From contig JAAPAO010000239.1 in the NCBI GenBank assembly GCA_013115145.1, forward strand, positions 1 to 48,746: 48,746 nucleotides of DNA. The letters are read 5' to 3'. Source of the DNA: Perkinsus chesapeaki ATCC PRA-425 (taxonomy: Eukaryota; Protista; Perkinsozoa). Under the pieces are notes generated by a model, which worked only from the letters and a program-made list of their open reading frames with translations, was not told the origin of the DNA and made no database searches. The translations under genes and the position numbers were made by a program. This document shows positions 12,301 through 42,205 of this stretch, piece by piece (position 1 is the first letter of the stretch; each line of letters begins with the position of its first letter).

Positions 12301-12360
12301 TGGACTTTGTCTAACTCGAGAAGTTACATCTTATTGAGTGTCGAGAGCGCACCATGAAGC
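9321..12360 (-). CDS. cls: Bacterial-type (PLD superfamily) cardiolipin synthase, multi-exon; one expected exon absent in place
   Basis: Two HKD motifs: RDHRKILIADN-TGFCGSMNI and HMHAKYSSFDGVYSFLGSNNFDRYSTRRNLE; also ILILDACGGSDF, GVPVVVFNP, SVIVASAYFTPPG; exons join in phase from 12025 to the stop at 9321. The 12190-12360 part is a tentative N-terminus. Confidence 0.85.
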
Positions 12361-12582
12361 CTTCAACATCAAAGAGCATCATTCTGGGGCGTATATGTGA
12401 CGGAGAATGGAGTCCGCATTGCCCACATGCTACAAGACTGTATTGGATTCGTCCGTTAGTGAGTCACCTAGTGAACACCATGGTGCTCCTATCAGTAAAC
12501 AATCCGTGGAGGCTATGTCGCGGCCAATAACATAAAGAAGAAGGAGACTACAACGGCGACGTAAAGTTTACCGCCCGGAAGA

Positions 12583-12651
12583 GGCGAGCGATATTTCCAG
12601 TGAATTGCCGTCTCCATAATACATGTAATCAACGTCTCTTATTTGGTTATA
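12583..12651 (+). promoter_or_regulatory. Conserved 69-nt upstream leader of family copy 3
   Basis: Same sequence as 7542-7610. Confidence 0.6.
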
Positions 12652-13849
12652 ATGTTGTTATCATTCCTATTATGGTTATCTATTGGTGGACTGTATGATC
12701 TATCTTTAATGGCTTATGCTCTATCAAGTACTAATGATCATACCTATGCTAAACCCCGACTTGGACAGCATCAGCCACGCAGCCAGTTGGGCAATAGCCT
12801 ACCGATTGGACAGTATGAGGACCTCAACGGCGCTCTGAAGCTGCAAGTTACAAGGGGTAGTAGATGCCACCTCACGGCGCCTTCACTAGACCAATCGTAC
12901 GACTGGTCATTCACAGCCCAAGAAAGCTACGACGGCGGCCGATTCAAGTGCTACAGTGACCCTTCAACAGAGCAACGCCGCATACCATCCTCCAGTGAGC
13001 CCTAAAATTCCATTCCATCCGTGGCTGGTTCAAATATGTCACTCGACCGACGGGACAGTTTGGGTGCGTGGGGTTAACAAGGGAAGGATTGAACTAAGGC
13101 GGGTTGAGCAGGTAACTCGAACTGTCTCGAGCTTTCGTCCCGCACCTACCCGAACGAGGGCATTTTCTCCGAACCCCGATGGACCAGGCACGACATCGAT
13201 GCTTGCCCGTCTATTGGAGGGAAGTTCGAGTGGTTCGGAGAAAAGAGTTCAGCCACATACAGCTAAATCAAGGAAGAAGAAAGTAAAATCTGGTACGAAG
13301 AAACGATCCGATTTGGCTGGCAAAAGGCTTGGAGACGGAGAGGATCTGTTAGCCCGTGCCATGAGTGAAGCGGGTGTGAGTGAAGGGAGCTCCCCGAAAC
13401 ACGAGGAATCACCTGCACCGCCAGAACTCCGCCGTCTATCAGGAGGGTCTATTAGTGAAGCGAAAAGTGTGATCGATGGTGGTAAATCCCCCCAGCCCGG
13501 GAATGATATGACGGCTAACAGTGAGGGTGCCTCTGGTGACTCATCTCATGTGGGCAAGTTGGCTCATGCGAAACCTTCCAGCAGTCGCATCGATACAAAG
13601 AAAGATGAAGGGAGAGGCGATGGGGAGAGTAAAGTAGGCAGCCCTTCTGATAAGCTCGAGATACCGGAACTCGATAAAAAAGCGATAGAAGACTTAATAA
13701 GAGAATTGGAGGAGGAAGGTATCCTGGATGGCTCAGCTTCCCCTCCCAAGGTATCGAATGAGGGGATTAGTCCTCCTTCCGATGGTCCTCTATCACCAAT
13801 GCCTAGCTCGTACACTTTTGATGATATACTAAAAAGTTGGAATGACTAA
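12652..13849 (+). pseudogene. Secreted protein family, copy 3, frameshifted
   Basis: Two overlapping ORFs (to 13005; 12956-13849). Spacer between DPS and conserved F is 46 nt versus 63 nt in the other four copies, i.e. a 17-nt deletion. Could also be an assembly error. Confidence 0.75.
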
Positions 13850-14082
13850 TAATTGACGAACTGCTCATCTAGCTACCAATTAGTTGCATTGTTACTTTGC
13901 TGCTGCTGATGCTGCTATCGCATTATTGCATTCCATGTATTAATATGATGTTAATGTATTAAACACTATGTGTTGTTGTATATAGTTGCATAAATGCTCA
14001 ACAGCTGTACTATCGCGGAATTGGGGGATCAGAAATTCGGAATGAAATTGGAGTAATGGTTACTTTACGGACCACGGCTCAC

Positions 14083-14241
14083 CACATCCACTCCACGCTC
14101 CTTCGCTCTTATCAAGGATTCATAGAATCTCTTAGCCACATCCGAACCATCAAATATGTAGCTTTCCATCCATACTCGATCCTTGGCGGAATCGATAGCC
14201 TTCAGCATGACAGGAAAACACGTATCTCCTCCTTCTAGAAT
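14083..14241 (-). other. cls: Isolated intact cardiolipin synthase exon (53 codons)
   Basis: tttcag|ILEGGDTCFPVMLKAIDSAKDRVWMESYIFDGSDVAKRFYESLIRAKERGVDV|gtgagc: canonical pre-HKD segment of cls, phase 0 at both ends. Confidence 0.85.
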
Positions 14242-14581
14242 CTGAAAGATTCAAAAGCGTTGGAGCATGGCACCCACTTTCTAAGCTTTACAATTCTCTC
14301 GGAGGAGAGTAACATCCGAAAATATTCAGCGGAATTTCATGGAATTTCCCCAAAAAAATATTTTAACGTTTGGCGGTGAAACAGTAATACAAGTTGGGCG
14401 CCATTTTGATGCGGAAATAGATTTGATATCTTTCGGGAACGAAAGACTTTTGAGGTGAAACTTCTCGCACATCAAGATCGCATCAATAGCAATGTGAATA
14501 CTAATATAGGCTTTTACAAGTAATAGCCTATATTAAACGATATCACCATTCACAGATGATTATACCCTTATACTTGGGAAT

Positions 14582-15638
14582 TTATACCAACTTCCAGGGA
14601 GTGGTCCCTTGGGGGGCACTGTGCAGTATGTATTTATTATATGCCCAAACATTCACGGTCATTCCCGAACCCATGGCTCCTACCTGAACATCATTCCCGC
14701 TGGAGAACTTTCCATGCTTATGCATCGTATGAAGTATATCAGCCCATTTCTGCCGAGCACCATATATCTCATCATCAGTGTACGTCGGGCATGTCTGCCT
14801 ATTATATGCCTTACAGACGGCCTCAACTACTTCTCTTGCTGCCTCCGTCCCACAAGTCTTACTACCTGATGAATCCACCCGCATCTATGAACAGTTCCGG
14901 TTCGGAAAACTCCTCGCCGGAGAGTCAAAAATAAGACGACAAAGTAATTGATGATTTCGATCACTGCCTCTAACCGAAATGATACGCAAAGGGCGCCCAA
15001 AAGTTCGAAAGATCACACAAGAATCATTCTGCCGAAATATGGAGAGATTTCTTGCCTTTCAACCATCTACCATTCAAACTGTATGTAAAACAAGAAGTCT
15101 GCGAGCATCCTATATTTCCTTAAATGAATGCTCTGCTTCGGTGAGGATAAGGTGAGTAGATTTCTTAGAAAAAAGTAACCAAACTGGCCGATCAAGAAAA
15201 TTACGGAGACCAGGAGTAAATATGTTATACCGTGTTGAATATTCTCGTTGTTTGTTAAACGTCTATTCGTGATTGAAGAGGTACAACCCTCCGCCTCCAC
15301 TATGAAACCTGCATTATTACACTCCTTCGTTATGGTATCGAACTCAGCTTCCTTTTGCTTTATTCGTTTCTGCCCCAACGCCCATCGTTTATATTCTCCA
15401 ATCCTTTCGCGCAGTCTTGTAAAAACCATCAAGATAGGAGTGGGTTGGGAATAAAACACATTTCAACTGGTAAGAAAGAATGATAGCCTATCATTGATAG
15501 GAGAAATGAATAGAGTCTGTTCAACAGACTCAACAGATCTTCCGCTTCATTAAAATGTCTGTGAAGGCTAAAGAAATGCGTAAAAGTCTGTTCGAATGCA
15601 TGAAGATGACGAGGGAAATACAGCACATAACAATCCAA
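14582..15638 (-). CDS. Possible hypothetical gene or gene remnants
   Basis: Three minus-strand ORFs of 69-130 aa in series; no recognised motif, splicing unresolved. Confidence 0.3.
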
Positions 15639-16340: not shown

Positions 16341-17189
16341 TAACATCATATTAATAGCTTGGTTAGCATTTGTGTTGGTCCGCATGGCGACTCGGGTTCA
16401 CATCTCAAACGTCGACTGTGGCGTTTTATAAACGTCACATCCAACCTGGCCAAATCTGGCGAGAGTTTCTAATGAGATGTTTCATTTGCATCTACCGACA
16501 TAGCGCGAAGATGTTCAAGTCACCCCTTGCGAAAGTTATGCCACCATAGTTATCCAATGTCAGTATTCTGAGCTAACTAACTCAGAACAACAAGGTAATG
16601 CACCTTGAAAAAGTTCCAGCTTCAGACATCTCACGCAGACTAGCTCGGAAAAGCTCTTACGAGCCCCAATGTGGCTTGCTGCCGCGAAGCCTTTTGCCAG
16701 CCAGCTTCAACGTCCCCAGGAGCTTTCAGAAGTTCCACATTGCACAGAGTCGCCAGTTTACGCTACGACCCCAGCCAGTAGGTTGGGAAGTCCCTCGTCC
16801 TCTTGCGCAGAATAGAAACCGCGTTTCCAACAACTTGTAACCTACTAGTTCAACAACTTGTGAACACTTTAGGACATCAATTTCGGACTAAACTTCGACA
16901 AACTAAGTTTGTCATCTGTAGGATTCGTGAGTCGCCCAAGGGGACCATACAAAAAAATACCAATTCTGCCAATTGTGCAATTGCGGAGCGAGCGGAGCTT
17001 ATTATCTGGAACTGGATCATTTCGCCGTGCGTGCGTGCGAATTATTTCTCGTTAACCAGAGCCAACTAGCTGATAGTCTATAGACGAAAAAGATTCCCCT
17101 TTATCTGGGGTTGCCTAGAGAATTAATAATTTTTTGAGAGCTACCCCGTGTGTCGAGTAAAAGCGCAAAAACACTTTTTGACGGAAAAA

Positions 17190-17260
17190 TGCAGCCTGTG
17201 GGATTCGAACCCACGACTTCTTCTCTTAATCGTTTCCGCGCGATTTGATCACTCGCTCGC
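17190..17260 (-). tRNA. tRNA-like 3' fragment (Leu-type T arm); pseudogene, not a complete tRNA
   Basis: GTCGTGGGTTCGAATCCCACAGGCTGCA: perfect T stem-loop, acceptor 3' strand, then TTTTT; no complementary 5' acceptor strand found. Confidence 0.4.
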
Positions 17261-17515
17261 ACCTCCAAAGCACTAGACGAGTGATGACGAACTAACAATG
17301 AGCAAACTAACAGCTGAGCGAGGTCCGCCACTTCGTCACGAAGGCCTAGTTTTAGCAGTACCAGGATTCTTTCGCGTAGTTGAAAGCTCGAAATTGTTGC
17401 CCTTATCCGCGGAATTGATGTCCCTATTCGCGAAGGTGATTTCCATATTCGTTAAGTTGGTGGCCTCAAGCGCGAAAAAGATTTCTGAAAGTTACAGAGC
17501 ATTCCGCCTTGAAGG

Positions 17516-34935: not shown

Positions 34936-35350
34936 CATTACTTACTGTATCCTGGTTCTAAGTTGTATAGTCCTGACTCAGGACTCCCGAGTCCTCAGGA
35001 CTCAGTCCTGTCGTAATGACAATGTGCAGACTGTTTAGCTTTGCGTTCTTGTTAGTACGTGCGACTAGTTGTCGCCGACAACGCGTGTGCTACTACTATT
35101 ACTAGTAGCACTAGTATTAGTTATATTGCATCTCTGGCCCTGCCCATCCGATACTGTTTGTTTGAGTGTGGCAATCTCATGCAGTTTGGATGCAACTTGT
35201 GAATCGTTCACAAAACTTGTGTCCTGCAACTTGTAGAACACAAGCTTTAATACTAGCTCGCCTTCGGGTGGCTAGTAATATTAGCCTAGTATCTAAATTT
35301 ACTTCTCATTTGTTGGCACAAGTACGCCCACTACTCGTTGTTGATTAATC

Positions 35351-38300
35351 ATGGAGTATTCTCATATTATCATTGATGATTCTGCCGTACCCCAAGCCTG
35401 TCAGTTTTGTCGTTCCGAGGCCGTCCCAGACTCGCAAGGCGAGTGGGTGCAGTGTGATAGATGCTTCGGTTGGTACCATATTCCATGTGCCGCTGGTTAT
35501 GATAATCGCGCTGGTCATGACCCTAATGATATTTGGCTATGCCAATCTTGCACGGTCATCCGAGAGAGAGAGGGCTCTCTAGATGCTAAAGCTATCGTGA
35601 TACCCATGCTGAAGCTAATCAAAGACCACGGCCTAATGTTTGCGGATGCGGGACATGTTCTAGCTAAAGCGGTGGCCAAAGGTGTTAAAGCTGTGATTCG
35701 TGGTTCAGTCAGTAATGGCATCTGTAAATCGGTCTGGAAGCTCAGTGGTGAGCAAAACTCCGCTGTGAATGTCTTGCTGGCTTGTAACGTGAAATGCCGA
35801 CTACAAGCAAATGGTAAACGTGTTGGATTCGTTGACTACTCCAAGTTTCTAAGCCTATCTGTGAGTCCTATAGCCGAGGACGCGAAGAAGCAGTATGACT
35901 CATACCTTGATAGGAACCTTGGCGCCCTCATATGTCGTGGTCTTGCAATCGAAGATCTGAAGTTTGTTTATGAGTCTCGTCCTTATGACATTTGTGAGAC
36001 AGCATTTCTCGAGGAAGCCCGCGAAGCTGCCGCCAACCGCTTGAGGAACTTCCTCCGTGAGCAAGGTGATAAACATGGCGGCCAGCAGTGGGATACTCAT
36101 GAGCTTTGGAAGCTTGTTAGACGACCTCTGCAAGCTATTATTATAGGCGGCTGTCACGCTGCTTTGCTGAGCAAAGCTCAAGCTGATATGTCGGGCAGGC
36201 CAGGTTCCATCGACTTGCTTAAGCGTTTGGGCGACTTCATGCCTGATGCCTTCATTGCGCTAGCTCAAAGGCCGACTTCGACTGCTGAGCATATCCTTGA
36301 GCTCGGGGGAGTTACCTACGAAGCACGTTGTGGTATTTGTGCAGATGGCGTTGCGGCTGATACATGTGTTGATATTGCTGCCCCTGAGAGCCATACTAAA
36401 GGAGCTAAGGCTATCTTTTACCGTTATCGTCTTCCTGTAGAAGCTGTATGCGATGTGTGCTACGAAACAAGACCGCTGAGCTATTTCGAGTTTAAGTTCT
36501 GTACTTGCTCGGCTAGAATCTGTCGATGTTGTGCTTTTCGTACTACAATTGCAGCTCACGTCGAAGGAGCTGACCTCAGATGCACCTCTTGCCGACAACC
36601 ACTCGATACTGACGATCGTAACGTCATCAAATTAGTTGCTGATACTACAGCTTTCGTGGAAGTGCTCAGGTCTCTGAACCCAAGTGTACCTACTGGGCCT
36701 GCCAATGTGGTAATACCAGACAACGACTTCGCCTTCACCAACGACGTTGCCTACGATATATTGGAGCGCATCTACGATCATGGGCCAACTCCCGCCGATG
36801 ACGACATTGCCCAGCGTGAAATAGCTGCTGATTATCGCCGACAGTTGCAACTTGGAGATGACGTCGATGATGAAGAAGTCATGCGCCGTGCTAGGCAAGC
36901 TGCCGTGGAAGGCAATCCACCAAACTCCCCTCCTGATGACAATATGTCATTAGCGAGTGAGAATCTGGATAGGGCATGGCCGAATGACGATGAGCTAGAA
37001 GTTGCTAATGGGGGAAATGATTCTCCCATTCGAAGCGGCCCTGTCTCTGTTGCTGGCGATGATCTGGATGGTCCTCTTTTCGTTGTGCCAGACGGTGATG
37101 GACATGACATACTAATGGATATTGGTACCCCCGATCTTGTGCAGGACGGTGACCTTATCAGTGGTAACGATAGAGAACCTTTTGTCGCTGCTGATGCTTC
37201 TCCCAGTACACATACTGTCAATTCTACCAGTCTTACCCGCGCTATCCGTGGTTCTGGAGCCCTCTCAGCTTCTCCGCAAGGAACAGCCGGTGCGGGTGAT
37301 TCTACTTCGGTTCCCTTGGCATCATCAGGATCCTCTTCAGGTGTTGGTCTGATCAGCAATGCTCGTATTGGATCTGGTATTGCTTCTCGGGATCCAGGAG
37401 GATCGGAGAATCAGCCTTCTCAAATGGGTTCCAATCCGTATGGTCGTACACTGCCGGGTATGATATTTACTGCGACGAACCGTCGGAATGAAGCTTTTTG
37501 GTGGGAGTATCGTCTTTATGCCCGAGAGGGGCAAGTTACGCGCGAGGGTGTCCGCTATAGGTGCCGTGGTGCTGGTCACTGCACGTCAACTTGTACTCTA
37601 CGACACGACAGAAGCGATTTTGTACGCTATCCTTCTGCTCATGGTCCAGCATGTGCTCCTGATCCACACCGACAAGAAGTCTCTTTAGCTGCAAGGCATC
37701 TTCAAGCTGCTGCACGAGCTGATCGGAATGTTGATGTCATTAGTGCCCTGACTTTGACCGGTGGTAACTCGTATGCTAACACTAGGGATGTTCGCAATCT
37801 GCGCGAACGCCAGGCCTATACTATGCGCAGCAGCCTCCAGCTGCCCGGTTTGCCTACGGGCCCTGTGGGGTCTGAAAGTCATCGACGTCAGACTCATGAG
37901 AATATTGCTCGGTACGGCCAGACAACTTTCACTAATGACCTGTTCCTTCGTTTCAATGAGGCAGCCGAAGGTATAGCCATCTTCGCGGCCGACGAGTGCC
38001 TCCGCCGATGGGACGAGGTTGAGATGTTCTTCATTGACTGTACCTTTTTCGTGACCCCACCTGGGTTTGCACAAACCCTAACGGTTACTGGTGCTGTTGG
38101 TACTCAGTTCGTTCAACTGGCTTATGCACTTCTTCCCGACAAGTCGGAAGCTACATATCGTCTTGCCTTACGCGAGTTGAAAAGAGCCGTTGAGCAGCTC
38201 AACGGTGAATGCACTATGACGGCGTGCATGGTTGACTTCGAGTCCGGTCTCCGCAATGCGATTGGTGCCGTGTTTCGTCTCCAGCCACAAGATCTCCGAG

Positions 38301-38914
38301 GCTGTCTGTTCCATGCTAGCAAAGCTTGGTTCAACAAGATACGGTCATTGGGTCTAGGTCCAGTTTATCGCGAAGAAGCCCGGGAGGGCCAAGCCCACTC
38401 GTATTTGAATAGGTGGTTACATGCTGTATTTGGTTTGCCCTGTCTACAGCCTGCTCAAGTTGGTAATGCATGGATTCATCTGAAAAGTTGCCAGCCAGCT
38501 GATGAGCGAATATCTGCTTTTGTTCTATATATGGACCGCCGCTTCATGACCGCGACGTCTACTTGGCCTCCTTCTCACTGGGCCGCTCCTGCTGGGGAAC
38601 GACACCGAACCAACAACGCCGCCGAGTCTCTTCATTCTGCTCTCAAGCTACTCATAGGGAGGCGACGTCCTAACATACGGATCTTCCTCAACAAGCTGAA
38701 AACTCACCATGAAGGCGTACGTGTGAAGCTTCGTTCTATCCACATCCCTAATTCCCGGCGAAGCCCCAAAGAGGTTGTTCGAGTTTCTATCGCTAATAGG
38801 TACGCTGATGGACAGATGACGTTTTTCGAGTACTTAGAGGGCGTTGGTCGTGTTAACACTTTTCCTAAATTGAGCCGTGATGGTGACGTCGATATCAGTG
38901 ATGTCCCAGCGTAA
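35351..38914 (+). CDS. PHD - RING-like - FLYWCH-like - MULE DDE transposase (1187 aa, intact)
   Basis: PHD C4HC3 (CQFC...WVQCDRCFGWYHIPC...WLCQSC); Cys8 RING-like (CDVC..CTC..CRCC..CTSC); YRC..HC...H zinc finger; MULE core FIDCTF...ALLPDKSEATY...VDFE...GCLFH...RTNNAAESLH. Confidence 0.92.
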   Translation: MEYSHIIIDDSAVPQACQFCRSEAVPDSQGEWVQCDRCFGWYHIPCAAGYDNRAGHDPNDIWLCQSCTVIREREGSLDAKAIVIPMLKLIKDHGLMFADAGHVLAKAVAKGVKAVIRGSVSNGICKSVWKLSGEQNSAVNVLLACNVKCRLQANGKRVGFVDYSKFLSLSVSPIAEDAKKQYDSYLDRNLGALICRGLAIEDLKFVYESRPYDICETAFLEEAREAAANRLRNFLREQGDKHGGQQWDTHELWKLVRRPLQAIIIGGCHAALLSKAQADMSGRPGSIDLLKRLGDFMPDAFIALAQRPTSTAEHILELGGVTYEARCGICADGVAADTCVDIAAPESHTKGAKAIFYRYRLPVEAVCDVCYETRPLSYFEFKFCTCSARICRCCAFRTTIAAHVEGADLRCTSCRQPLDTDDRNVIKLVADTTAFVEVLRSLNPSVPTGPANVVIPDNDFAFTNDVAYDILERIYDHGPTPADDDIAQREIAADYRRQLQLGDDVDDEEVMRRARQAAVEGNPPNSPPDDNMSLASENLDRAWPNDDELEVANGGNDSPIRSGPVSVAGDDLDGPLFVVPDGDGHDILMDIGTPDLVQDGDLISGNDREPFVAADASPSTHTVNSTSLTRAIRGSGALSASPQGTAGAGDSTSVPLASSGSSSGVGLISNARIGSGIASRDPGGSENQPSQMGSNPYGRTLPGMIFTATNRRNEAFWWEYRLYAREGQVTREGVRYRCRGAGHCTSTCTLRHDRSDFVRYPSAHGPACAPDPHRQEVSLAARHLQAAARADRNVDVISALTLTGGNSYANTRDVRNLRERQAYTMRSSLQLPGLPTGPVGSESHRRQTHENIARYGQTTFTNDLFLRFNEAAEGIAIFAADECLRRWDEVEMFFIDCTFFVTPPGFAQTLTVTGAVGTQFVQLAYALLPDKSEATYRLALRELKRAVEQLNGECTMTACMVDFESGLRNAIGAVFRLQPQDLRGCLFHASKAWFNKIRSLGLGPVYREEAREGQAHSYLNRWLHAVFGLPCLQPAQVGNAWIHLKSCQPADERISAFVLYMDRRFMTATSTWPPSHWAAPAGERHRTNNAAESLHSALKLLIGRRRPNIRIFLNKLKTHHEGVRVKLRSIHIPNSRRSPKEVVRVSIANRYADGQMTFFEYLEGVGRVNTFPKLSRDGDVDISDVPA

Positions 38915-39058
38915 GATACGCCGAGTAACCTTGTGCTCGGCACATGCTTCGGTGACTGACACATTGCGGCTGCTTGATCTATTTGTGCTGCATCGAACTC
39001 TCCCATGCCATTAATTTTATGTAGGGCCCGTGCGGGCGTCATGTCTTATGTATTTTTG

Positions 39059-39915
39059 GTGCTGCACTGAAGGCTCTTATGTGGAGCCTGTGCGCGATAT
39101 CCTTTATCTGCTTTATGTGCTGCACTGAAGGCTCTTATGTGAAGCCCGTGCGCAATATCCTTTATCTGCTCTATGTGCTGCACTGAAGGCTCTTATGTGG
39201 AGCCCGTACGCGGNNNNNNNNNNNNNNNNNNNNNNNNNNNNNNNNNNNNNNNNNNNNNNNNNNNNNNNNNNNNNNNNNNNNNNNNNNNNNNNNNNNNNNN
39301 NNNNNNNNNNTGTGAAGCCCGTGCGCAATATCCTTTATCTGCTCTATGTGCTGCACTGAAGGCTCTTATGTGGAGCCCGTACGCGCACACTTTATCTGCT
39401 TTATGTGCTGCACTGAAGGCTCTNNNNNNNNNNNNNNNNNNNNNNNNNNNNNNNNNNNNNNNNNNNNNNNNNNNNNNNNNNNNNNNNNNNNNNNNNNNNN
39501 NNNNNNNNNNNNNNNNNNNNNCTTATGTGGAGCCCGTGCGCGATATCCTTTATCTGCTCTATGTGCTGCACTGAAGGCTCTTATGTGGAGCCCGTGCGCG
39601 ATATCCTTTATCTGCTCTATGTGCTGCACTGAAGGCTCTTATGTGGAGCCCGTACGCGGCACACTTTATCTGCTTTATGTGCTGCACTGAAGGCTCTTAT
39701 GTGAAGCCCGTGCGCAATATCCTTTATCTGCTTTATGTGCTGCACTGGAGGCTCTTATGTGAAGCCCGTGCGCGATATCCTTTATCTGCTTTATGTGCTG
39801 CACTGAAGGCTCTTATGTGGAGCCCGTGCGCGATATCCTTTATCTGCTTTATGTGCTGCACTGAAGGCTCTTATGTGGAGCCCGTACGCGGCACACTTTA
39901 TCTGCTCTATGTGCT
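39059..39915. repeat. ~55-58-bp tandem array (two N gaps)
   Basis: tatcctttatctgct(t/c)tatgtgctgcactgaaggctcttatgtg(g/a)agcccgtgcgc(g/a)a, period 58 (39061, 39119) with shorter cacactttatc variants; gaps at 39214-39310 and 39424-39520. Confidence 0.95.
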
Positions 39916-41836
39916 CTTTTCGACGGATTCTCTGATGGATGTTCTGTGAAACGTTATGCCTTCCCAATCTGCGGAGTCGGGATTCCTGATTTGCTCTCCT
40001 GTTCTGCCATTTTCCACTTAGAGCAACAGTACAAGCGGCAAGTAGTGTTTAAAGTTTCCACTAAAGAGGTAGTTTATGTAGCAGTGTTAGTCCGTATCTG
40101 TAGCTTCTATGGTCGTTTCAAACGCCTGAAAGTGTGATACGGGCTGCTGGTGCACCGGCGTCTTCTAAGATCCCCAATCTTTATTTCAGGTTCAACAATC
40201 CGTGTATCCGCAATGGCTGGCAGTGGCTGTTACTCTAGGGTTCACATTAATCATTCTGGTAATGCTTTGGTGACTAATACGACCTCGGGTTTCACAGTTT
40301 TCAGGCCTGCACACCCAAGCAAATATCTGACGGATCTGAGCAGTGCTTTGTAGGTTACTTATTCTGCGTTCTTCACACTGCTACTTTAATTACCGTCTCA
40401 AATCCACACTTGTCTTGTGTTAATCGGAACATTACATTTGGCACCCCGCTGCGGAGTCTCCGCATGAGCACCATACCGGATCTTATTATATTATGTTGAA
40501 AGTCTTGAGTATCTCGATTTCTTGGCCTTGAATGCTATGCTACGAGTAAGCACTGTGGTAGTACTAATTAGGGATCTCCCTCGGTTATCATCCTACATAA
40601 CACAACAGGGCCGTGAGACTGAAGTCACTCAGAAGATTGCATTCGAACGGCTGCTTGGACAGAATGATAAACTTAACTTGTGTTTGTTGTGTTAATTTTA
40701 TAGTTCAATTCAAAGTTGCTGTGACAACAACGTGGTTATGAGTTCCAACTACGCGCTCGTATCGTAACGTATCACGGATAAACTATACAGCAAACGACAT
40801 CGTGAACACAACATAATGGAGAAACATGGAAACTACAATTGCTTGATACGTGCTGGAAACTCAACCCTCAAAATCCTAGAATGAGATCAAGTGTACTTAC
40901 ACAAACTTTTGCAAACATTCAACTATCTTCATATGTAGAGACTACAACCCGCGCATCAAACTGTGCAACTCAAACTAAGCAACGACTCGTCCGGGTTCCA
41001 AAACGTTTCTTCTTGTAGAGTCCAAAAGTGTTCTTTATGTTGGGGCATATTACATCTCGTTTCCCGTGAAACTAAAAGCATTTCCAATATTCACACTCCA
41101 CACGTTCAGGTCGCTAATTGCAAGAGTTTTTACAACTCAACGCATCCGAGGGTACAGAAAATCAGCAATCAGAAAGTAACCGAAATTAGTCAAACTAGGC
41201 TGAGCAAACAATTTGTTTGTCTGTTTGTTTGAAACTAACTTAGTTGCAAGTCACGCCGGCTCTATGCCACGTATGTCACAATACAAAAATCCCTAAGGAT
41301 CTCCAGTCTCCGAGGTTGCGGAATTCACGTTCATTCGCTGGATACCACCGTGCATAAGACGCCTCGCTCAAATGGCGAAATACAGCTGGTAACACGTATA
41401 ATCTAGGAATTAGGCAAAAGCTGCATAGAGAACCGATTACAAAAGAAAAAACGCTCAGTACACACCCATTTGGCATGTTCTGATAGGAAACATGTACAGC
41501 GGAAAAAATGATGATATCCGTGTCTGATTGAGGAAATACGAGGATAACACCTACTCTCGCCAAAAAATCCGGAATTACCCGTTCTAGAGAAGAAATCAGC
41601 AGCCACTGCTAGGCAAAACCACGTTTACAAAACCGCTGTCAGCGTACGGGCGAGCGATTTTGGCCAGGTAGAAAAGCGACCGGACCAAAAATTACGGTAG
41701 ACTCGGAGCGGTAGCAGCCTGTAAGAGGTGAAATCCAGTGAGAATGGGTTGGAACAAAGGTTTTACCGTACATTTTATTGAGCACTAGATTAGGGAAATC
41801 AGCAACCTTGGCGAGTCGGCGAAACCTGGTGCCCCG

Positions 41837-42205
41837 TTACTACTAGACACTGGGACGAATTCTATATATGTCCCAGTGAAGCCAGGTCTCCTTTCCAGTA
41901 TACTTGCCAAGATTTCGCAGCTAGCTAAGCTTACTTTCAAATGGAATGCCATTGCTAAAGCTTGGCAGTTATCATGCAAGCTTCGTTCTGCTTTACCTGT
42001 ATTGTCATTTGAGCTCGGCGTAGGCAATATCCCTCTGAAGATGAGCCATCTCAACTATGTTCGTCAAGCTCTCGGTGATATATGCTTCCTCATTTTCCGA
42101 GAGACTAAGGCTAATTACTGGATCCTGCCTGGTGAAGCTTTCATCGGCAACTATGTAGAATTTCATCGTAAAGAAGGTCGGGTAGGAATTGCCGAACTCG
42201 GTTAG
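41837..42205 (+). pseudogene. Pepsin-like aspartyl protease, C-terminal part
   Basis: LLLDTGTNSIYVP (second catalytic DTG)...LPVLSFELG...CFLIF...YWILPGEAFIGNYVEFHRKEGRVGIAELG*. Confidence 0.9.

What the first reader, a model, noticed from the sequence alone, without database searches (positions are those of the whole stretch)
35351..38914. Transposase fused to PHD and RING-like fingers: chromatin reader plus possible E3 ligase
Seen: one ORF with a PHD (~35399-35551), an unknown ~280-aa region, a Cys8 RING-like finger (~36449-36595), an acidic low-complexity linker, a FLYWCH-like finger (~37500-37670) and a complete MULE core with D, D, CxxH and E (~38030-38630). Established: FLYWCH-MULE pairs are known; PHDs often read H3K4 methylation; RINGs are E3 ligases. 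The RAG1/RAG2 recombinase combines RING, PHD and a DDE core but derives from Transib, so this is analogy only. Inference: chromatin-guided targeting, consistent with insertion into a gene, or built-in anti-silencing.
Basis: partly seen in the sequence, partly recalled or inferred. Interest (0 to 1): 0.75.

Follow-up and report, generated by a model that had tools for sequence, protein, structure and literature searches.

The report
Active Perkinsus transposon with PHD-USP-RING transposase
The 1187-residue ORF is the transposase of an 11.2-kb Mutator-like transposon that moved recently in the clam parasite Perkinsus chesapeaki, and besides its DNA-cutting core it carries a histone-reader-type finger, a probably inactive deubiquitinase-like domain and a RING-type finger, a combination found only in Perkinsus here.

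Summary
Window 35351-38914 (+) is one intact 1187-aa ORF. It has a PHD finger (Pfam above cut-off), eight invariant cysteines with CNOT4-like C4C4 RING spacing, a FLYWCH-like C2HC finger and a complete MULE DDE/CxxH core.

- The "unknown ~280 aa" (aa 76-361) folds like a USP deubiquitinase. All 31 best of 48,161 PDB chains are USP-fold proteins, Z 8.0-10.1. No Cys or His is conserved at the expected catalytic positions.
- The ORF lies in a delimited 11,212-bp element (30625-41836). It has 8-bp target-site duplications and ~19-nt imperfect inverted ends, and it splits a pepsin-like aspartyl protease gene.
- A second insertion exists. Contigs C2836 and C17 carry the two element ends at 100% and 99% identity, both next to a different 8-bp duplication. 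So the element moved recently and is not a domesticated gene.

The element fits the published Phantom-type MULE description: 8-bp TSD, short TIR, two ORFs, FLYWCH-type finger, minisatellite after the transposase. PHD, RING, Ulp1, OTU and C19 domains are each known in transposons. The PHD-USP-like-RING-FLYWCH-MULE fusion appeared only in Perkinsus.

Chromatin targeting and E3 activity remain inference. Two notes of this scan on the same stretch gave leads, which I tested.

The parts
29822..30624 (+). 5' part of the interrupted host gene (pepsin-like aspartyl protease), up to and including the first copy of the target-site duplication
   Evidence: Pfam Asp PF00026, E 7.9e-15, profile positions 15-193 of 315
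30617..30624 (.). Target-site duplication, copy 1 (TTACTACT)
   Evidence: Read directly; identical 8-mer at 41837-41844
30625..30643 (+). 5' terminal inverted repeat (about 19 nt, 15 of 19 matching the 3' end ungapped); holds the 11-mer CAGGTTTCGCC
   Evidence: the 11-mer occurs only twice in the 48.7-kb window, 8 nt from each element end, in inverted orientation. The same terminus is 100% identical on contig C2836
30638..30695 (+). Three direct subterminal repeats of the type CGCCAAA(C/T)AG; candidate transposase-binding sites
   Evidence: Motif positions 30640, 30655, 30684. The binding role is inferred by analogy with the subterminal repeats of Muta1 (PMC5499845)
32266..34188 (+). ORF2, 640 aa, function unknown; a second gene carried inside the element
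   Evidence: No Pfam family. Paralogues lie directly downstream of MULE transposase ORFs on contigs C269 and C230. Only Perkinsus-type relatives found
34132..34943 (.). 134-bp tandem array between ORF2 and the transposase gene (holds an N run at 34671-34766)
   Evidence: unique to this locus in the assembly
35351..38914 (+). Transposase ORF, 1187 aa (stop codon included)
   Evidence: identical over aa 1-520 to NCBI FOL47_004172 of Perkinsus chesapeaki
35399..35551 (+). PHD finger, C4HC3 (aa 17-67)
   Evidence: Pfam PHD 27.8 bits against cut-off 24. Family profile against solved PHD fingers, E 7e-7. Structural matches to PHD fingers of BPTF, TAF3 and others
35576..36433 (+). USP-fold domain (aa 76-361), probably a catalytically dead deubiquitinase-like domain
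   Evidence: AlphaFold2 model with block-mean pLDDT mostly 81-94 over this stretch, falling to about 42-46 in aa 332-346. VIA-align against 48,161 PDB chains: ranks 1-31 are all USP-fold proteins, Z 8.0-10.1, 148-162 aligned residues, rmsd 3.2-4.2. Same result within Foldseek's top 1000. ESM Atlas UCH clusters, TM 0.48-0.49. No conserved Cys or His at the expected catalytic positions
36449..36592 (+). C4C4 RING-like finger (aa 367-414), spacing C-x2-C-x13-C-x-C-x4-C-x2-C-x16-C-x2-C
   Evidence: Eight invariant Cys in 8 homologues. Family profile against solved RINGs: RAD5 1.4e-4, RING2 2.3e-4, NOT4 2.6e-4, TRIM32 3.1e-4. Pfam zf-RING_4 only E 0.67 for this copy; the best family member reaches 0.004-0.013
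36611..36910 (+). Conserved helical region after the RING (aa 421-520; invariant N443, L471, R496)
36911..37450 (+). Low-complexity linker rich in S, G, D and P (aa 521-700); length varies among paralogues
37466..37660 (+). FLYWCH-like (WRKY-GCM1 type) finger, C2HC variant (C738, C744, H764, C768)
   Evidence: No Pfam hit on this copy. It aligns with homologues whose N-termini are Pfam FLYWCH at E 1.8e-10 and 1.9e-12. hhalign of the Perkinsus group against the FLYWCH-positive group: probability 96.9%, E 1.5e-10. The model shows a run of beta strands here
38036..38626 (+). MULE DDE catalytic core: D896, D962, CxxH 985-988, E1092
   Evidence: Pfam MULE 30.4 bits against cut-off 27.6. D896, D962, C985 and H988 are invariant and E1092 nearly invariant in 29 homologues. 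Model pLDDT 87; best solved match is the IS256-family ISCth4 transposase, E 1.9e-5, followed by Hermes and RAG1
38960..39985 (.). 58-bp minisatellite immediately after the transposase stop codon (holds N runs at 39214-39310 and 39424-39521)
   Evidence: unique to this locus. A minisatellite after the transposase ORF is listed for Phantom (aphids) and, before the 3' TIR, for Rehavkus (PMC6446971)
41818..41836 (-). 3' terminal inverted repeat
   Evidence: the same terminus is 99% identical on contig C17
41837..41844 (.). Target-site duplication, copy 2 (TTACTACT)
41837..42205 (+). 3' part of the interrupted aspartyl protease gene, in the same codon phase relative to the duplication as the 5' part
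   Evidence: Pfam Asp, E 2.9e-11, profile positions 202-314 of 315, starting at residue 2 of the piece

Best explanation
The ORF encodes the transposase of an autonomous, recently mobile, 11.2-kb Phantom-type Mutator-like element of Perkinsus chesapeaki.

Shown:
- The element is bounded by imperfect ~19-nt inverted ends and makes 8-bp target-site duplications.
- It has inserted at two or more places. One insertion splits an aspartyl protease exon. The other lies about 410 bp upstream of a PTR2 transporter gene.
- Its transposase has a FLYWCH-type finger and an intact DDE/CxxH core.

Inferred from the characterised relative Muta1: the FLYWCH-like finger binds the terminal and subterminal repeats, and the DDE core performs cut-and-paste through a hairpin on the flanking DNA.

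The N-terminal 520 residues are a conserved three-part module: a PHD finger, a USP-fold domain without conserved catalytic Cys or His, and a C4C4 RING-like finger. The module is kept under selection in at least five diverged lineages in two Perkinsus species.

My preferred mechanism, which is inferred and not shown: the module couples transposition to nucleosomes and the ubiquitin system. The PHD would dock on a histone H3 tail. The dead USP domain would act as a ubiquitin or ubiquitin-like binding surface. The RING would recruit an E2 to modify chromatin, repair factors or the transposase itself. This would bias where, or how safely, the element integrates.

Confidence by layer:
- transposase of a real, recently active MULE: about 0.9
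- N-terminal module functional and part of the same protein: about 0.8
- USP fold: about 0.8
- chromatin/ubiquitin coupling as the role: about 0.45
For: ORF and domains.

Element ends, duplication and split host gene.

Second insertion:
- C2836:1-72 is 100% identical to the 5' end and C17:1-208 is 99% identical to the 3' end.
- Both junctions carry AGGATGAT next to the exact termini.
- Only two exact 5' ends exist in the assembly.

USP fold.

Transposase fold.

Selection:
- Window and C1114 copies have synonymous differences at saturation (pS about 0.8) with pN 0.21-0.46, and both frames stay open over more than 1100 codons.
- All 8 RING ligands are invariant across 8 sequences. All 8 PHD ligands are invariant in the three P. 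chesapeaki copies.

Same architecture in P. olseni loci L023, L024 and L025.

Sequence features compatible with an E2-binding RING: a hydrophobic residue between ligands 1 and 2 in 7 of 8 sequences, and Arg after the last ligand in 6 of 8. The interpretation rests on general RING knowledge.

Literature:
- Phantom features: 8-10 bp TSD, 18-613 bp TIR, 1-2 ORFs, FLYWCH, minisatellite after the ORF (PMC6446971).
- Muta1 mechanism (PMC5499845).
- Recurrent Ulp1, OTU and C19 domains in transposases (PMC2836005).
Against: - No RNA evidence: no listed run holds the stretch. The public gene model splits the ORF.
- The internal part of the second copy is not assembled, so it is unknown whether both copies are intact.
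- No empty site was found.
- RING and FLYWCH do not reach Pfam thresholds on this copy.
- The USP assignment rests on a predicted structure from an 8-sequence alignment, with Z about 10 and only about half of a USP domain aligned. No sequence profile links it to USPs.
- The catalytic-residue statement is inferred from alignment ranges, not from a residue-level superposition.
- The PHD's nearest solved relatives include fingers that do not read H3K4me3 (MTF2 and PHF1 PHD1).
- Cross-brace fingers of transposases can bind DNA rather than chromatin (piggyBac CRD, PMC5861402).
- Two insertion sites say nothing about target preference.
Confidence: 0.7

Rival explanations
1. The zinc fingers serve the transposition machinery directly. 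The PHD and/or RING-like cross-brace fingers would bind transposon-end DNA or mediate transposase oligomerisation, as the cysteine-rich cross-brace domain of piggyBac binds its ends. There would be no histone reading and no E3 activity.
For: The piggyBac CRD is a cross-brace finger with sequence-specific DNA binding (PMC5861402, title and abstract seen). The RING stays below Pfam thresholds. The element has terminal and subterminal repeats that need binders.
Against: The protein already has a FLYWCH-type DNA-binding finger in the usual position. About 450-aa FLYWCH-MULE relatives lack the module altogether. The PHD profile matches histone-binding PHDs and the RING profile matches E3 RINGs at E about 1e-4. 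The fingers flank a USP-fold domain, which points to ubiquitin rather than DNA.
Confidence: 0.15
2. The module acts on the element's own regulation or on host defence rather than on targeting. It would drive auto-ubiquitination and turnover of the transposase (self-limitation), or interfere with host silencing or repair factors (anti-silencing). ORF2 could be a partner, as VANC is in VANDAL MULEs.
For: ORF2 sits next to MULE transposase genes at three loci. Ubiquitin and SUMO protease domains recur in transposases, and a role in repair after transposition has been proposed (PMC2836005). VANC-type anti-silencing in MULEs is cited in PMC6446971.
Against: Nothing distinguishes this reading from the targeting reading with the present data. 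ORF2 has no recognisable domain. The USP-like domain lacks the residues needed to remove ubiquitin.
Confidence: 0.2
3. The N-terminal 520 residues are a captured host gene fragment (Pack-MULE-like transduplication) fused in frame by chance, with no function in transposition.
For: MULEs often take up host DNA (PMC6446971). The closest non-Perkinsus relatives lack the module.
Against: The module is retained with all zinc ligands in at least five lineages that are saturated at synonymous sites, in two species. No separate host gene with this module was found among the best hits of the exhaustive search. pN is well below pS in every part.
Confidence: 0.07
4. The ORF is a domesticated, immobile transposase-derived host gene, like FHY3/FAR1, MUSTANG or the Oxytricha MULE proteins.
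For: Only one internal copy is assembled, and all paralogues are old at 68% identity or less. The ORF is under purifying selection.
Against: The ORF lies inside a unit with inverted ends and 8-bp duplications that interrupts a host gene. A second insertion has 99-100% identical ends and its own duplication. There is no synteny with the P. olseni loci.
Confidence: 0.04

Closest known systems
Phantom family of Mutator-like elements, including Muta1 of Aedes aegypti (Marquez and Pritham 2010, as summarised in PMC6446971; Muta1 biochemistry in PMC5499845)
   Same: N-terminal FLYWCH-type finger plus a MULE DDE/CxxH core. 8-bp duplication (Phantom: 8-10 bp). Short inverted ends (18-613 bp). One or two ORFs. 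Minisatellite after the transposase ORF. Subterminal repeats. The best non-Perkinsus hits are FLYWCH-MULE proteins of about 450-465 aa.
   Different: A 700-residue N-terminal extension (PHD, USP-like domain, RING, linker) that those proteins lack. The finger is C2HC instead of C2H2. The element is very long at 11.2 kb. The host is an alveolate. Placement in a tree with reference Phantom sequences was not done.
Rehavkus elements (Repbase; described in PMC6446971)
   Same: A MULE-related transposase with a PHD finger and a minisatellite before the 3' inverted repeat.
   Different: Rehavkus is reported only from arthropods and annelids, with a 9-bp duplication and one ORF, and no RING or USP-like domain is reported. 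No Rehavkus sequence was available here for comparison.
MULEs and other DNA transposons with ubiquitin or SUMO system domains: Ulp1 in plant, hydra and lancelet MULEs (KI-MULEs), OTU in Ginger1 and Helitrons, a Peptidase C19 plus IS5-like transposase protein in Trichomonas vaginalis, a separate RING ORF in Ghost, a C3HC4 RING in MuDR-37_Pi (PMC2836005, PMC6446971)
   Same: A transposase physically joined to a ubiquitin-pathway domain. An OTU-MULE protein of Panagrellus is among the hits here (P0116).
   Different: Those are single, apparently active protease domains or a lone RING. Here a USP fold without catalytic residues is flanked by a PHD and a RING in one polypeptide, N-terminal to the DNA-binding finger.
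RAG1/RAG2 V(D)J recombinase
   Same: A DDE recombinase working through a flank-side hairpin (shared with MULEs according to PMC5499845), combined with a RING (RAG1) and a PHD (RAG2).
   Different: RAG derives from Transib, and its RING and PHD lie on two proteins. It has no USP-like domain or FLYWCH finger. The resemblance is convergent architecture, not membership. RAG1 appears only as a weak structural match of the core.
Pseudo-USP domains (PAN2, Sad1/USP39)
   Same: A USP fold kept without the catalytic residues and used as a structural or binding module. PAN2 and Sad1/USP39 are among the structural matches (4q8g, 4czw, 4msx, 6ah0_W). PAN2 also pairs it with an RNase H-like nuclease.
   Different: No detectable sequence relationship. 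Here the partners are zinc fingers and a transposase. Ubiquitin binding is untested.

Membership tests
Mutator-like (MULE) transposase / Mutator superfamily | DDE triad with a CxxH motif between the second D and the E, and a Pfam MULE match above threshold | tested here: met
   D896, D962, C985-x2-H988, E1092. D896, D962, C985 and H988 are invariant and E1092 nearly invariant in 29 homologues. PF10551 scores 30.4 bits against 27.6.
Mutator-like (MULE) transposase / Mutator superfamily | Element with terminal inverted repeats and target-site duplications of about 8-11 bp | tested here: met
   8-bp duplications at two independent insertions, TTACTACT and AGGATGAT. About 19-nt ends with 15 of 19 matching.
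Mutator-like (MULE) transposase / Mutator superfamily | RNase H-like transposase fold related to IS256 | tested here: met
   Model pLDDT 87. The best solved match is the ISCth4 (IS256 family) transposase, E 1.9e-5, probability 1.00.
Phantom family | FLYWCH (WRKY-GCM1 fold) finger at the N-terminus of the transposase core | tested here: inconclusive
   Pfam FLYWCH gives no hit on this copy. hhalign links the Perkinsus finger to FLYWCH-positive homologues at 96.9% probability, E 1.5e-10. The ligands are C2HC, not C2H2.
Phantom family | Placement inside the Phantom clade in a transposase tree with reference sequences | not tested
   No reference Phantom or Muta1 sequences were fetched. The argument rests on best hits and on the element features tabulated in PMC6446971.
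PHD finger | C4HC3 ligand pattern and a Pfam match above threshold | tested here: met
   C17, C20, C35, C38, H43, C46, C64, C67. PF00628 scores 27.8 bits against 24. The family profile hits solved PHDs at E 7e-7.
PHD finger | Binding of a histone H3 tail in a defined methylation state | not testable with these tools
   W41 in the WYH motif and W32 lie where BPTF-type cage residues lie. That comparison is from my own knowledge. The nearest solved sequences are mixed.
RING finger (E3 ligase type) | Eight zinc ligands with cross-brace spacing | tested here: met
   C-x2-C-x13-C-x-C-x4-C-x2-C-x16-C-x2-C, invariant in 8 sequences. This is the C4C4 spacing of CNOT4. NOT4 (1e4u) is hit at E 2.6e-4.
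RING finger (E3 ligase type) | A curated family model above threshold | tested here: not met
   zf-RING_4 gives E 0.67 on this copy. The best family member (P0015) reaches E 0.004-0.013, below the gathering scores. UniProt labels P0152 and P0015 'RING-type domain-containing'.
RING finger (E3 ligase type) | E2 binding and ubiquitin transfer | not testable with these tools
   Only compatible residues are seen: a hydrophobic residue between ligands 1 and 2, and Arg after ligand 8.
USP deubiquitinase (peptidase C19) | USP thumb-palm-fingers fold | tested here: met
   The top 31 of 48,161 chains are all USP-fold proteins, Z 8.0-10.1, about 155 aligned residues, rmsd about 3.5, for aa 76-361. Atlas UCH clusters give TM 0.48-0.49. 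This is based on a predicted model.
USP deubiquitinase (peptidase C19) | Catalytic Cys at the start of the first thumb helix and catalytic His in the palm | tested here: not met
   The expected Cys position (aa 79-81) reads A-K-A. Only the C1114 paralogue has a Cys nearby. The position two residues after the invariant G351, where I expect the catalytic His by comparison with the USP 'GHY' strand (my own knowledge), reads K, Y, F, T, F, L or V across the seven different homologues, never His. No invariant Cys or His lies in aa 76-361. Positions were inferred from alignment ranges, not from a residue-level superposition.
USP deubiquitinase (peptidase C19) | Sequence-profile match (Pfam UCH or UCH_1) | tested here: not met
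   No UCH hit in any of the 8 family members at E up to 10. No USP appears in the listed best 60 of the 219 PDB sequences matched at E up to 10.
Domesticated transposase gene | Loss of element ends and mobility, and a fixed syntenic position | tested here: not met
   Ends and duplications are present and a second recent insertion exists. There is no synteny with the P. olseni loci.

The most novel reading that the evidence does not exclude
The transposase is a nucleosome-directed integrase that both reads and writes chromatin marks. The PHD would bind a histone H3 tail. The dead USP domain would bind ubiquitin on a histone, such as H2A or H2B ubiquitin. The RING would ubiquitinate local chromatin or repair factors. 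Integration and repair would then be steered by chromatin state. This would be a convergent, single-polypeptide counterpart of the RAG1 RING and RAG2 PHD arrangement, arising in the Mutator superfamily and still in an active transposon.
Probability: 0.25. Interest if true: 0.85.

Novelty: new variant of a known kind. Interest (0 to 1): 0.62.

Why it matters
DNA transposons that choose targets through chromatin are poorly documented. RAG1/2 is the textbook case of a transposase-derived enzyme with a RING and a PHD, but its mobile ancestors lack that full combination.

This element appears to have moved recently. Its transposase carries a PHD, a USP-fold ubiquitin-type module and a RING on one chain. 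That makes it possible to test whether accessory chromatin or ubiquitin domains shape integration in a mobile ancestor-like state.

It adds a USP fold, probably inactive, to the Ulp1, OTU and C19 domains already seen in transposases. This strengthens the idea that the ubiquitin system is a recurrent partner of transposition.

For Perkinsus, an under-annotated parasite of bivalves, it documents a recently active 11-kb transposon that disrupts genes. It also shows that the public gene models truncate these proteins. An active cut-and-paste element could be explored as a genetic tool for alveolates.

Tried and rejected
- Generic inverted-repeat searches around the ORF found no convincing ends. 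The ends emerged only from the split host gene and the second copy.
- Aligning the 134-bp repeat unit to the downstream flank gave nothing.
- DNA comparison with paralogues shows similarity only in the transposase coding part, at 65%, so paralogues could not define the ends.
- No empty site for either insertion was found in the assembly.
- No synteny was found between the window and P. olseni loci L023-L026.
- RNA evidence: the look-up of sequencing runs listed only two small runs of the same species label holding next to none of the words. None was listed that holds the stretch.
- The word search with aa 700-1187 found nothing, because of its length window. The exhaustive search then found 3081 relatives.
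- The phage collection gave no match.
- ORF2 has no Pfam family, only Perkinsus-type relatives and no usable Atlas hit. A Logan contig with a 65% (nucleotide) related ORF2 shows no transposase within 1.9 kb downstream, which is uninformative.
- Foldseek alone gave no match at E 0.001 or better for the N-terminal model. The USP fold became clear only with VIA-align.
- Complex prediction of aa 70-425 with Perkinsus ubiquitin returned no answer (score 0.00, controls not run). This is neither support for nor evidence against ubiquitin binding.
- A profile-profile test of the USP-like domain against genuine USP sequences could not be run, because no USP sequences could be fetched within the remaining caps.
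Each half was scanned by reference.

Full report
**What the window is**

The first 520 residues of the ORF are identical to NCBI protein FOL47_004172 of Perkinsus chesapeaki, an alveolate parasite of clams. The assembly has 41.7 Mb in 3544 contigs, and the window is contig C1511.

**Check of the observation**

Window 35351-38914 (+) is a single 1187-codon frame from an ATG.

- **PHD and MULE:** Pfam finds a PHD finger at aa 17-67 (27.8 bits, cut-off 24) and a MULE domain at aa 912-991 (30.4 bits, cut-off 27.6).
- **PHD ligands:** C17, C20, C35, C38, H43, C46, C64, C67.
- **Cys8 ligands:** C367, C370, C384, C386, C391, C394, C411, C414.
- **Catalytic residues:** D896, D962, C985-x2-H988, E1092.

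**One protein or several?**

The public gene model (727 aa) removes a short in-frame piece, then jumps to another frame and ends at 37688. That tail lies in a different frame from the ORF that homologues conserve across this stretch.

Against the split model, contig C1114 carries a paralogue of 1367 aa in one continuous frame with the same order of parts. It is 68% identical in the transposase and 38% in the N-terminal part. The two copies are saturated at synonymous sites (pS about 0.8), while pN is 0.21-0.46 in every segment. Two frames of more than 1100 codons would not stay open at that divergence without selection on the whole protein.

P. olseni loci L023, L024 and L025 have the same order of parts, and their gene models are truncated too. 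No RNA run holding the stretch was listed, so the single transcript remains unproven.

**The Cys8 finger**

The spacing C-x2-C-x13-C-x-C-x4-C-x2-C-x16-C-x2-C is that of the C4C4 RING of CNOT4. On this copy alone Pfam gives only zf-RING_4 at E 0.67, and one P. olseni member reaches E 0.004-0.013 for several RING models.

A profile of eight family members hits solved RING domains at RAD5 1.4e-4, RING2 2.3e-4, NOT4 2.6e-4 and TRIM32 3.1e-4. I call it a RING-like finger. Membership by curated threshold is not met, and profile-level similarity is.

**The FLYWCH-like finger**

Pfam is silent on this copy. However, phmmer alignments to about 460-aa relatives run through their N-terminal Pfam-positive FLYWCH domains (E 1.8e-10 and 1.9e-12).

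hhalign of the Perkinsus-type finger against the FLYWCH-positive group gives 96.9% probability and E 1.5e-10. The ligands are C738, C744, H764 and C768, a C2HC variant.

**The 'unknown' 280 residues**

An AlphaFold2 model of aa 1-520 has mean pLDDT 81. Block means across aa 70-330 are mostly 81-94.

| Search | Result for aa 76-361 |
|---|---|
| VIA-align against 48,161 PDB representatives, without Foldseek preselection | Ranks 1-31 are all USP-fold proteins: USP12, USP35, USP2, USP36, CYLD, Sad1/USP39, USP14, USP18, USP30, USP7 and others, including the pseudo-enzyme PAN2. Z 8.0-10.1, 148-162 aligned residues, rmsd 3.2-4.2. Viral papain-like proteases follow lower down, along with two weaker USP25 entries. 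|
| Second look at Foldseek's top 1000 | Same families |
| ESM Atlas | Compact UCH-family clusters from giant viruses, TM 0.48-0.49 |

No sequence profile reaches USPs.

Where USPs carry the catalytic Cys, at the start of the first thumb helix, this protein reads A79-K80-A81. Only the C1114 copy has a Cys there. Two residues after the invariant G351, where I expect the catalytic His by comparison with the USP 'GHY' strand (my own knowledge), the family has K, Y, F, T, F, L or V. No Cys or His is invariant in aa 76-361.

I therefore read it as a USP-fold domain that has lost protease chemistry. The caveat is that these positions come from alignment ranges, not from a superposition.

**The transposase core**

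The model of aa 690-1187 has pLDDT 87 and pTM 0.82. Its best match is the IS256-family ISCth4 transposase (E 1.9e-5), followed by Hermes, RAG1, Mos1 and integrases. That is as expected for a MULE.

**The element and its mobility**

A note of this scan on the same stretch proposed limits of 30617-41844, and I tested them.

- **Duplication:** the 8-mer TTACTACT occurs at 30617-30624 and at 41837-41844.
- **Ends:** between the duplicates, the ends are GGGCGTAACAGGTTTCGCC and, on the other strand, CGGGGCACCAGGTTTCGCC, with 15 of 19 positions matching.
- **Rarity:** the 11-mer CAGGTTTCGCC occurs nowhere else in the window.
- **Split host gene:** the upstream flank is an ORF matching Pfam Asp positions 15-193 of 315. 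The downstream flank, read from the duplication in the same codon phase, matches positions 202-314.

So an 11,212-bp unit interrupts a pepsin-like aspartyl protease exon. I scanned the two halves separately and did not join them.

The first 72 nt of the element recur at 100% identity at the end of contig C2836. The last 208 nt recur at 99% at the start of contig C17. In both, the exact element terminus abuts the 8-mer AGGATGAT, and neither flank resembles the window's flanks.

This is a second insertion with its own 8-bp duplication, so transposition was recent. The interior of that copy was evidently collapsed in the assembly. Only two exact 5' ends exist. The second site lies about 410 bp upstream of the start codon of a PTR2/POT transporter gene.

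**Other contents of the element**

- **ORF2:** 32266-34188, 640 aa, with no known domain. Its paralogues lie just downstream of MULE transposase ORFs on contigs C269 and C230, so it is a recurrent companion gene.
- **Tandem arrays:** a 134-bp array (34132-34943) precedes the transposase gene. A 58-bp minisatellite (38960-39985) follows its stop codon. Both are unique to this locus.

**Comparison with what is known**

The Phantom group of MULEs is tabulated with 8-10 bp duplications, inverted ends of 18-613 bp or none, one or two ORFs, FLYWCH or no finger, and a minisatellite after the transposase ORF (PMC6446971). This element fits on every count. A tree with reference sequences was not made.

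Muta1, grouped with Phantom, cuts through a hairpin on the flanking DNA and depends on the DDE motif and on terminal and subterminal repeats (PMC5499845).

Accessory domains have precedents:

- a PHD in Rehavkus, which also has a minisatellite before the 3' end
- a separate RING ORF in Ghost
- a C3HC4 RING in MuDR-37_Pi (all three in PMC6446971)
- Ulp1 in MULEs
- OTU in Ginger1 and Helitrons
- a Peptidase C19 domain on an IS5-like transposase of Trichomonas (PMC2836005)

An OTU-MULE protein of Panagrellus is among the hits here. Perkinsus marinus was known to have 21 MULE-domain proteins (PMC3558436).

I did not find, in the literature searched or in the databases, the fusion of PHD, USP-like domain and RING with FLYWCH-MULE. 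Among the best 150 of 3081 relatives in 1.84 billion representatives, the N-terminal module occurs only in Perkinsus proteins.

**Mechanism**

Shown: this is a mobile MULE with an intact catalytic core and a conserved, selected N-terminal module.

Inferred:
- The FLYWCH-like finger recognises the ends.
- The DDE core does cut-and-paste.
- The PHD, dead-USP and RING trio links the transposase to nucleosomes and the ubiquitin system.

I prefer a role in chromatin-dependent targeting or in managing the break (about 0.45) over self-regulation or anti-silencing (about 0.2), DNA binding by the fingers (about 0.15) and a functionless captured fragment (below 0.1). The domesticated-gene reading is contradicted by the second insertion.

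The RAG1/RAG2 parallel is convergence only.

**Verdict**

It is enlarged by the USP-fold domain and by proof of recent mobility. This is a new variant of a known kind, of moderate to high interest.

Noticed in passing
window 35351-37688 (NCBI model FOL47_004172, P0001): The public gene model is 727 aa. It removes a short in-frame piece and then splices into another frame, ending in a 41-residue tail in a different frame from the conserved ORF. The FLYWCH and MULE parts are thereby lost. P. olseni models of the same family (P0153, P0152, P0015) are likewise truncated or patched.
   Followed up: partly
window 32266-34188; L021 (C269) 2580-4514; L022 (C230) 10-1068: A 640-aa ORF without any known domain lies next to MULE transposase genes at three loci. 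In the window it is upstream of the transposase, and on C269 and C230 it is downstream. Its function is unknown.
   Followed up: partly
G000 contigs C3074, C815, C3041; P. olseni L023 and L025: Other family copies break at the same two protein positions, about aa 806 and about aa 1066. These look like conserved intron positions. The window and C1114 copies are continuous there, so they look intronless.
   Followed up: no
window 34671-34766, 39214-39310, 39424-39521: Three N runs of 96-98 bases lie inside the two tandem arrays that flank the transposase gene. The array lengths are therefore uncertain.
   Followed up: no
L033 (C2836) 1-2037 and L032 (C17) 1-216: The second insertion of the element lies about 410 bp upstream of a 518-aa PTR2/POT transporter ORF (Pfam PTR2, E 2e-63). 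The two contigs end or begin inside the element, which shows an assembly break at a collapsed repeat.
   Followed up: yes
L023 (P. olseni JABANP010000002.1) 10001-14700: The P. olseni family member sits between two ammonium transporter genes. It has a 69-bp minisatellite (12699-13415) inside the gap at the aa 806 position and a 27-bp array just after the coding region.
   Followed up: no
L022 (C230), protein P0021: A shorter architecture exists in the same genome: PHD plus MULE in 644 aa, without the USP-like domain or the RING, followed by an ORF2 homologue.
   Followed up: partly
window 16980-17350: This stretch is 87-98% identical to two pieces of contig C652 near another MULE transposase copy (L009). 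It may be a fragment of a different repeat or of a non-autonomous element.
   Followed up: no
L026 (P. olseni JABANP010000479.1) 5360-9338, protein P0156: A family member has PHD and RING but lacks part of the USP-like domain, and no transposase part lies within 8 kb downstream. It is either a decayed copy or a free-standing module.
   Followed up: no
L040 and L041 (Logan run SRR12548988): An unnamed public sequencing run holds closer relatives of both element genes. ORF2 is 65% identical at nucleotide level and the transposase C-terminus is 88% identical at protein level. This suggests a related element in another Perkinsus-like organism.
   Followed up: partly
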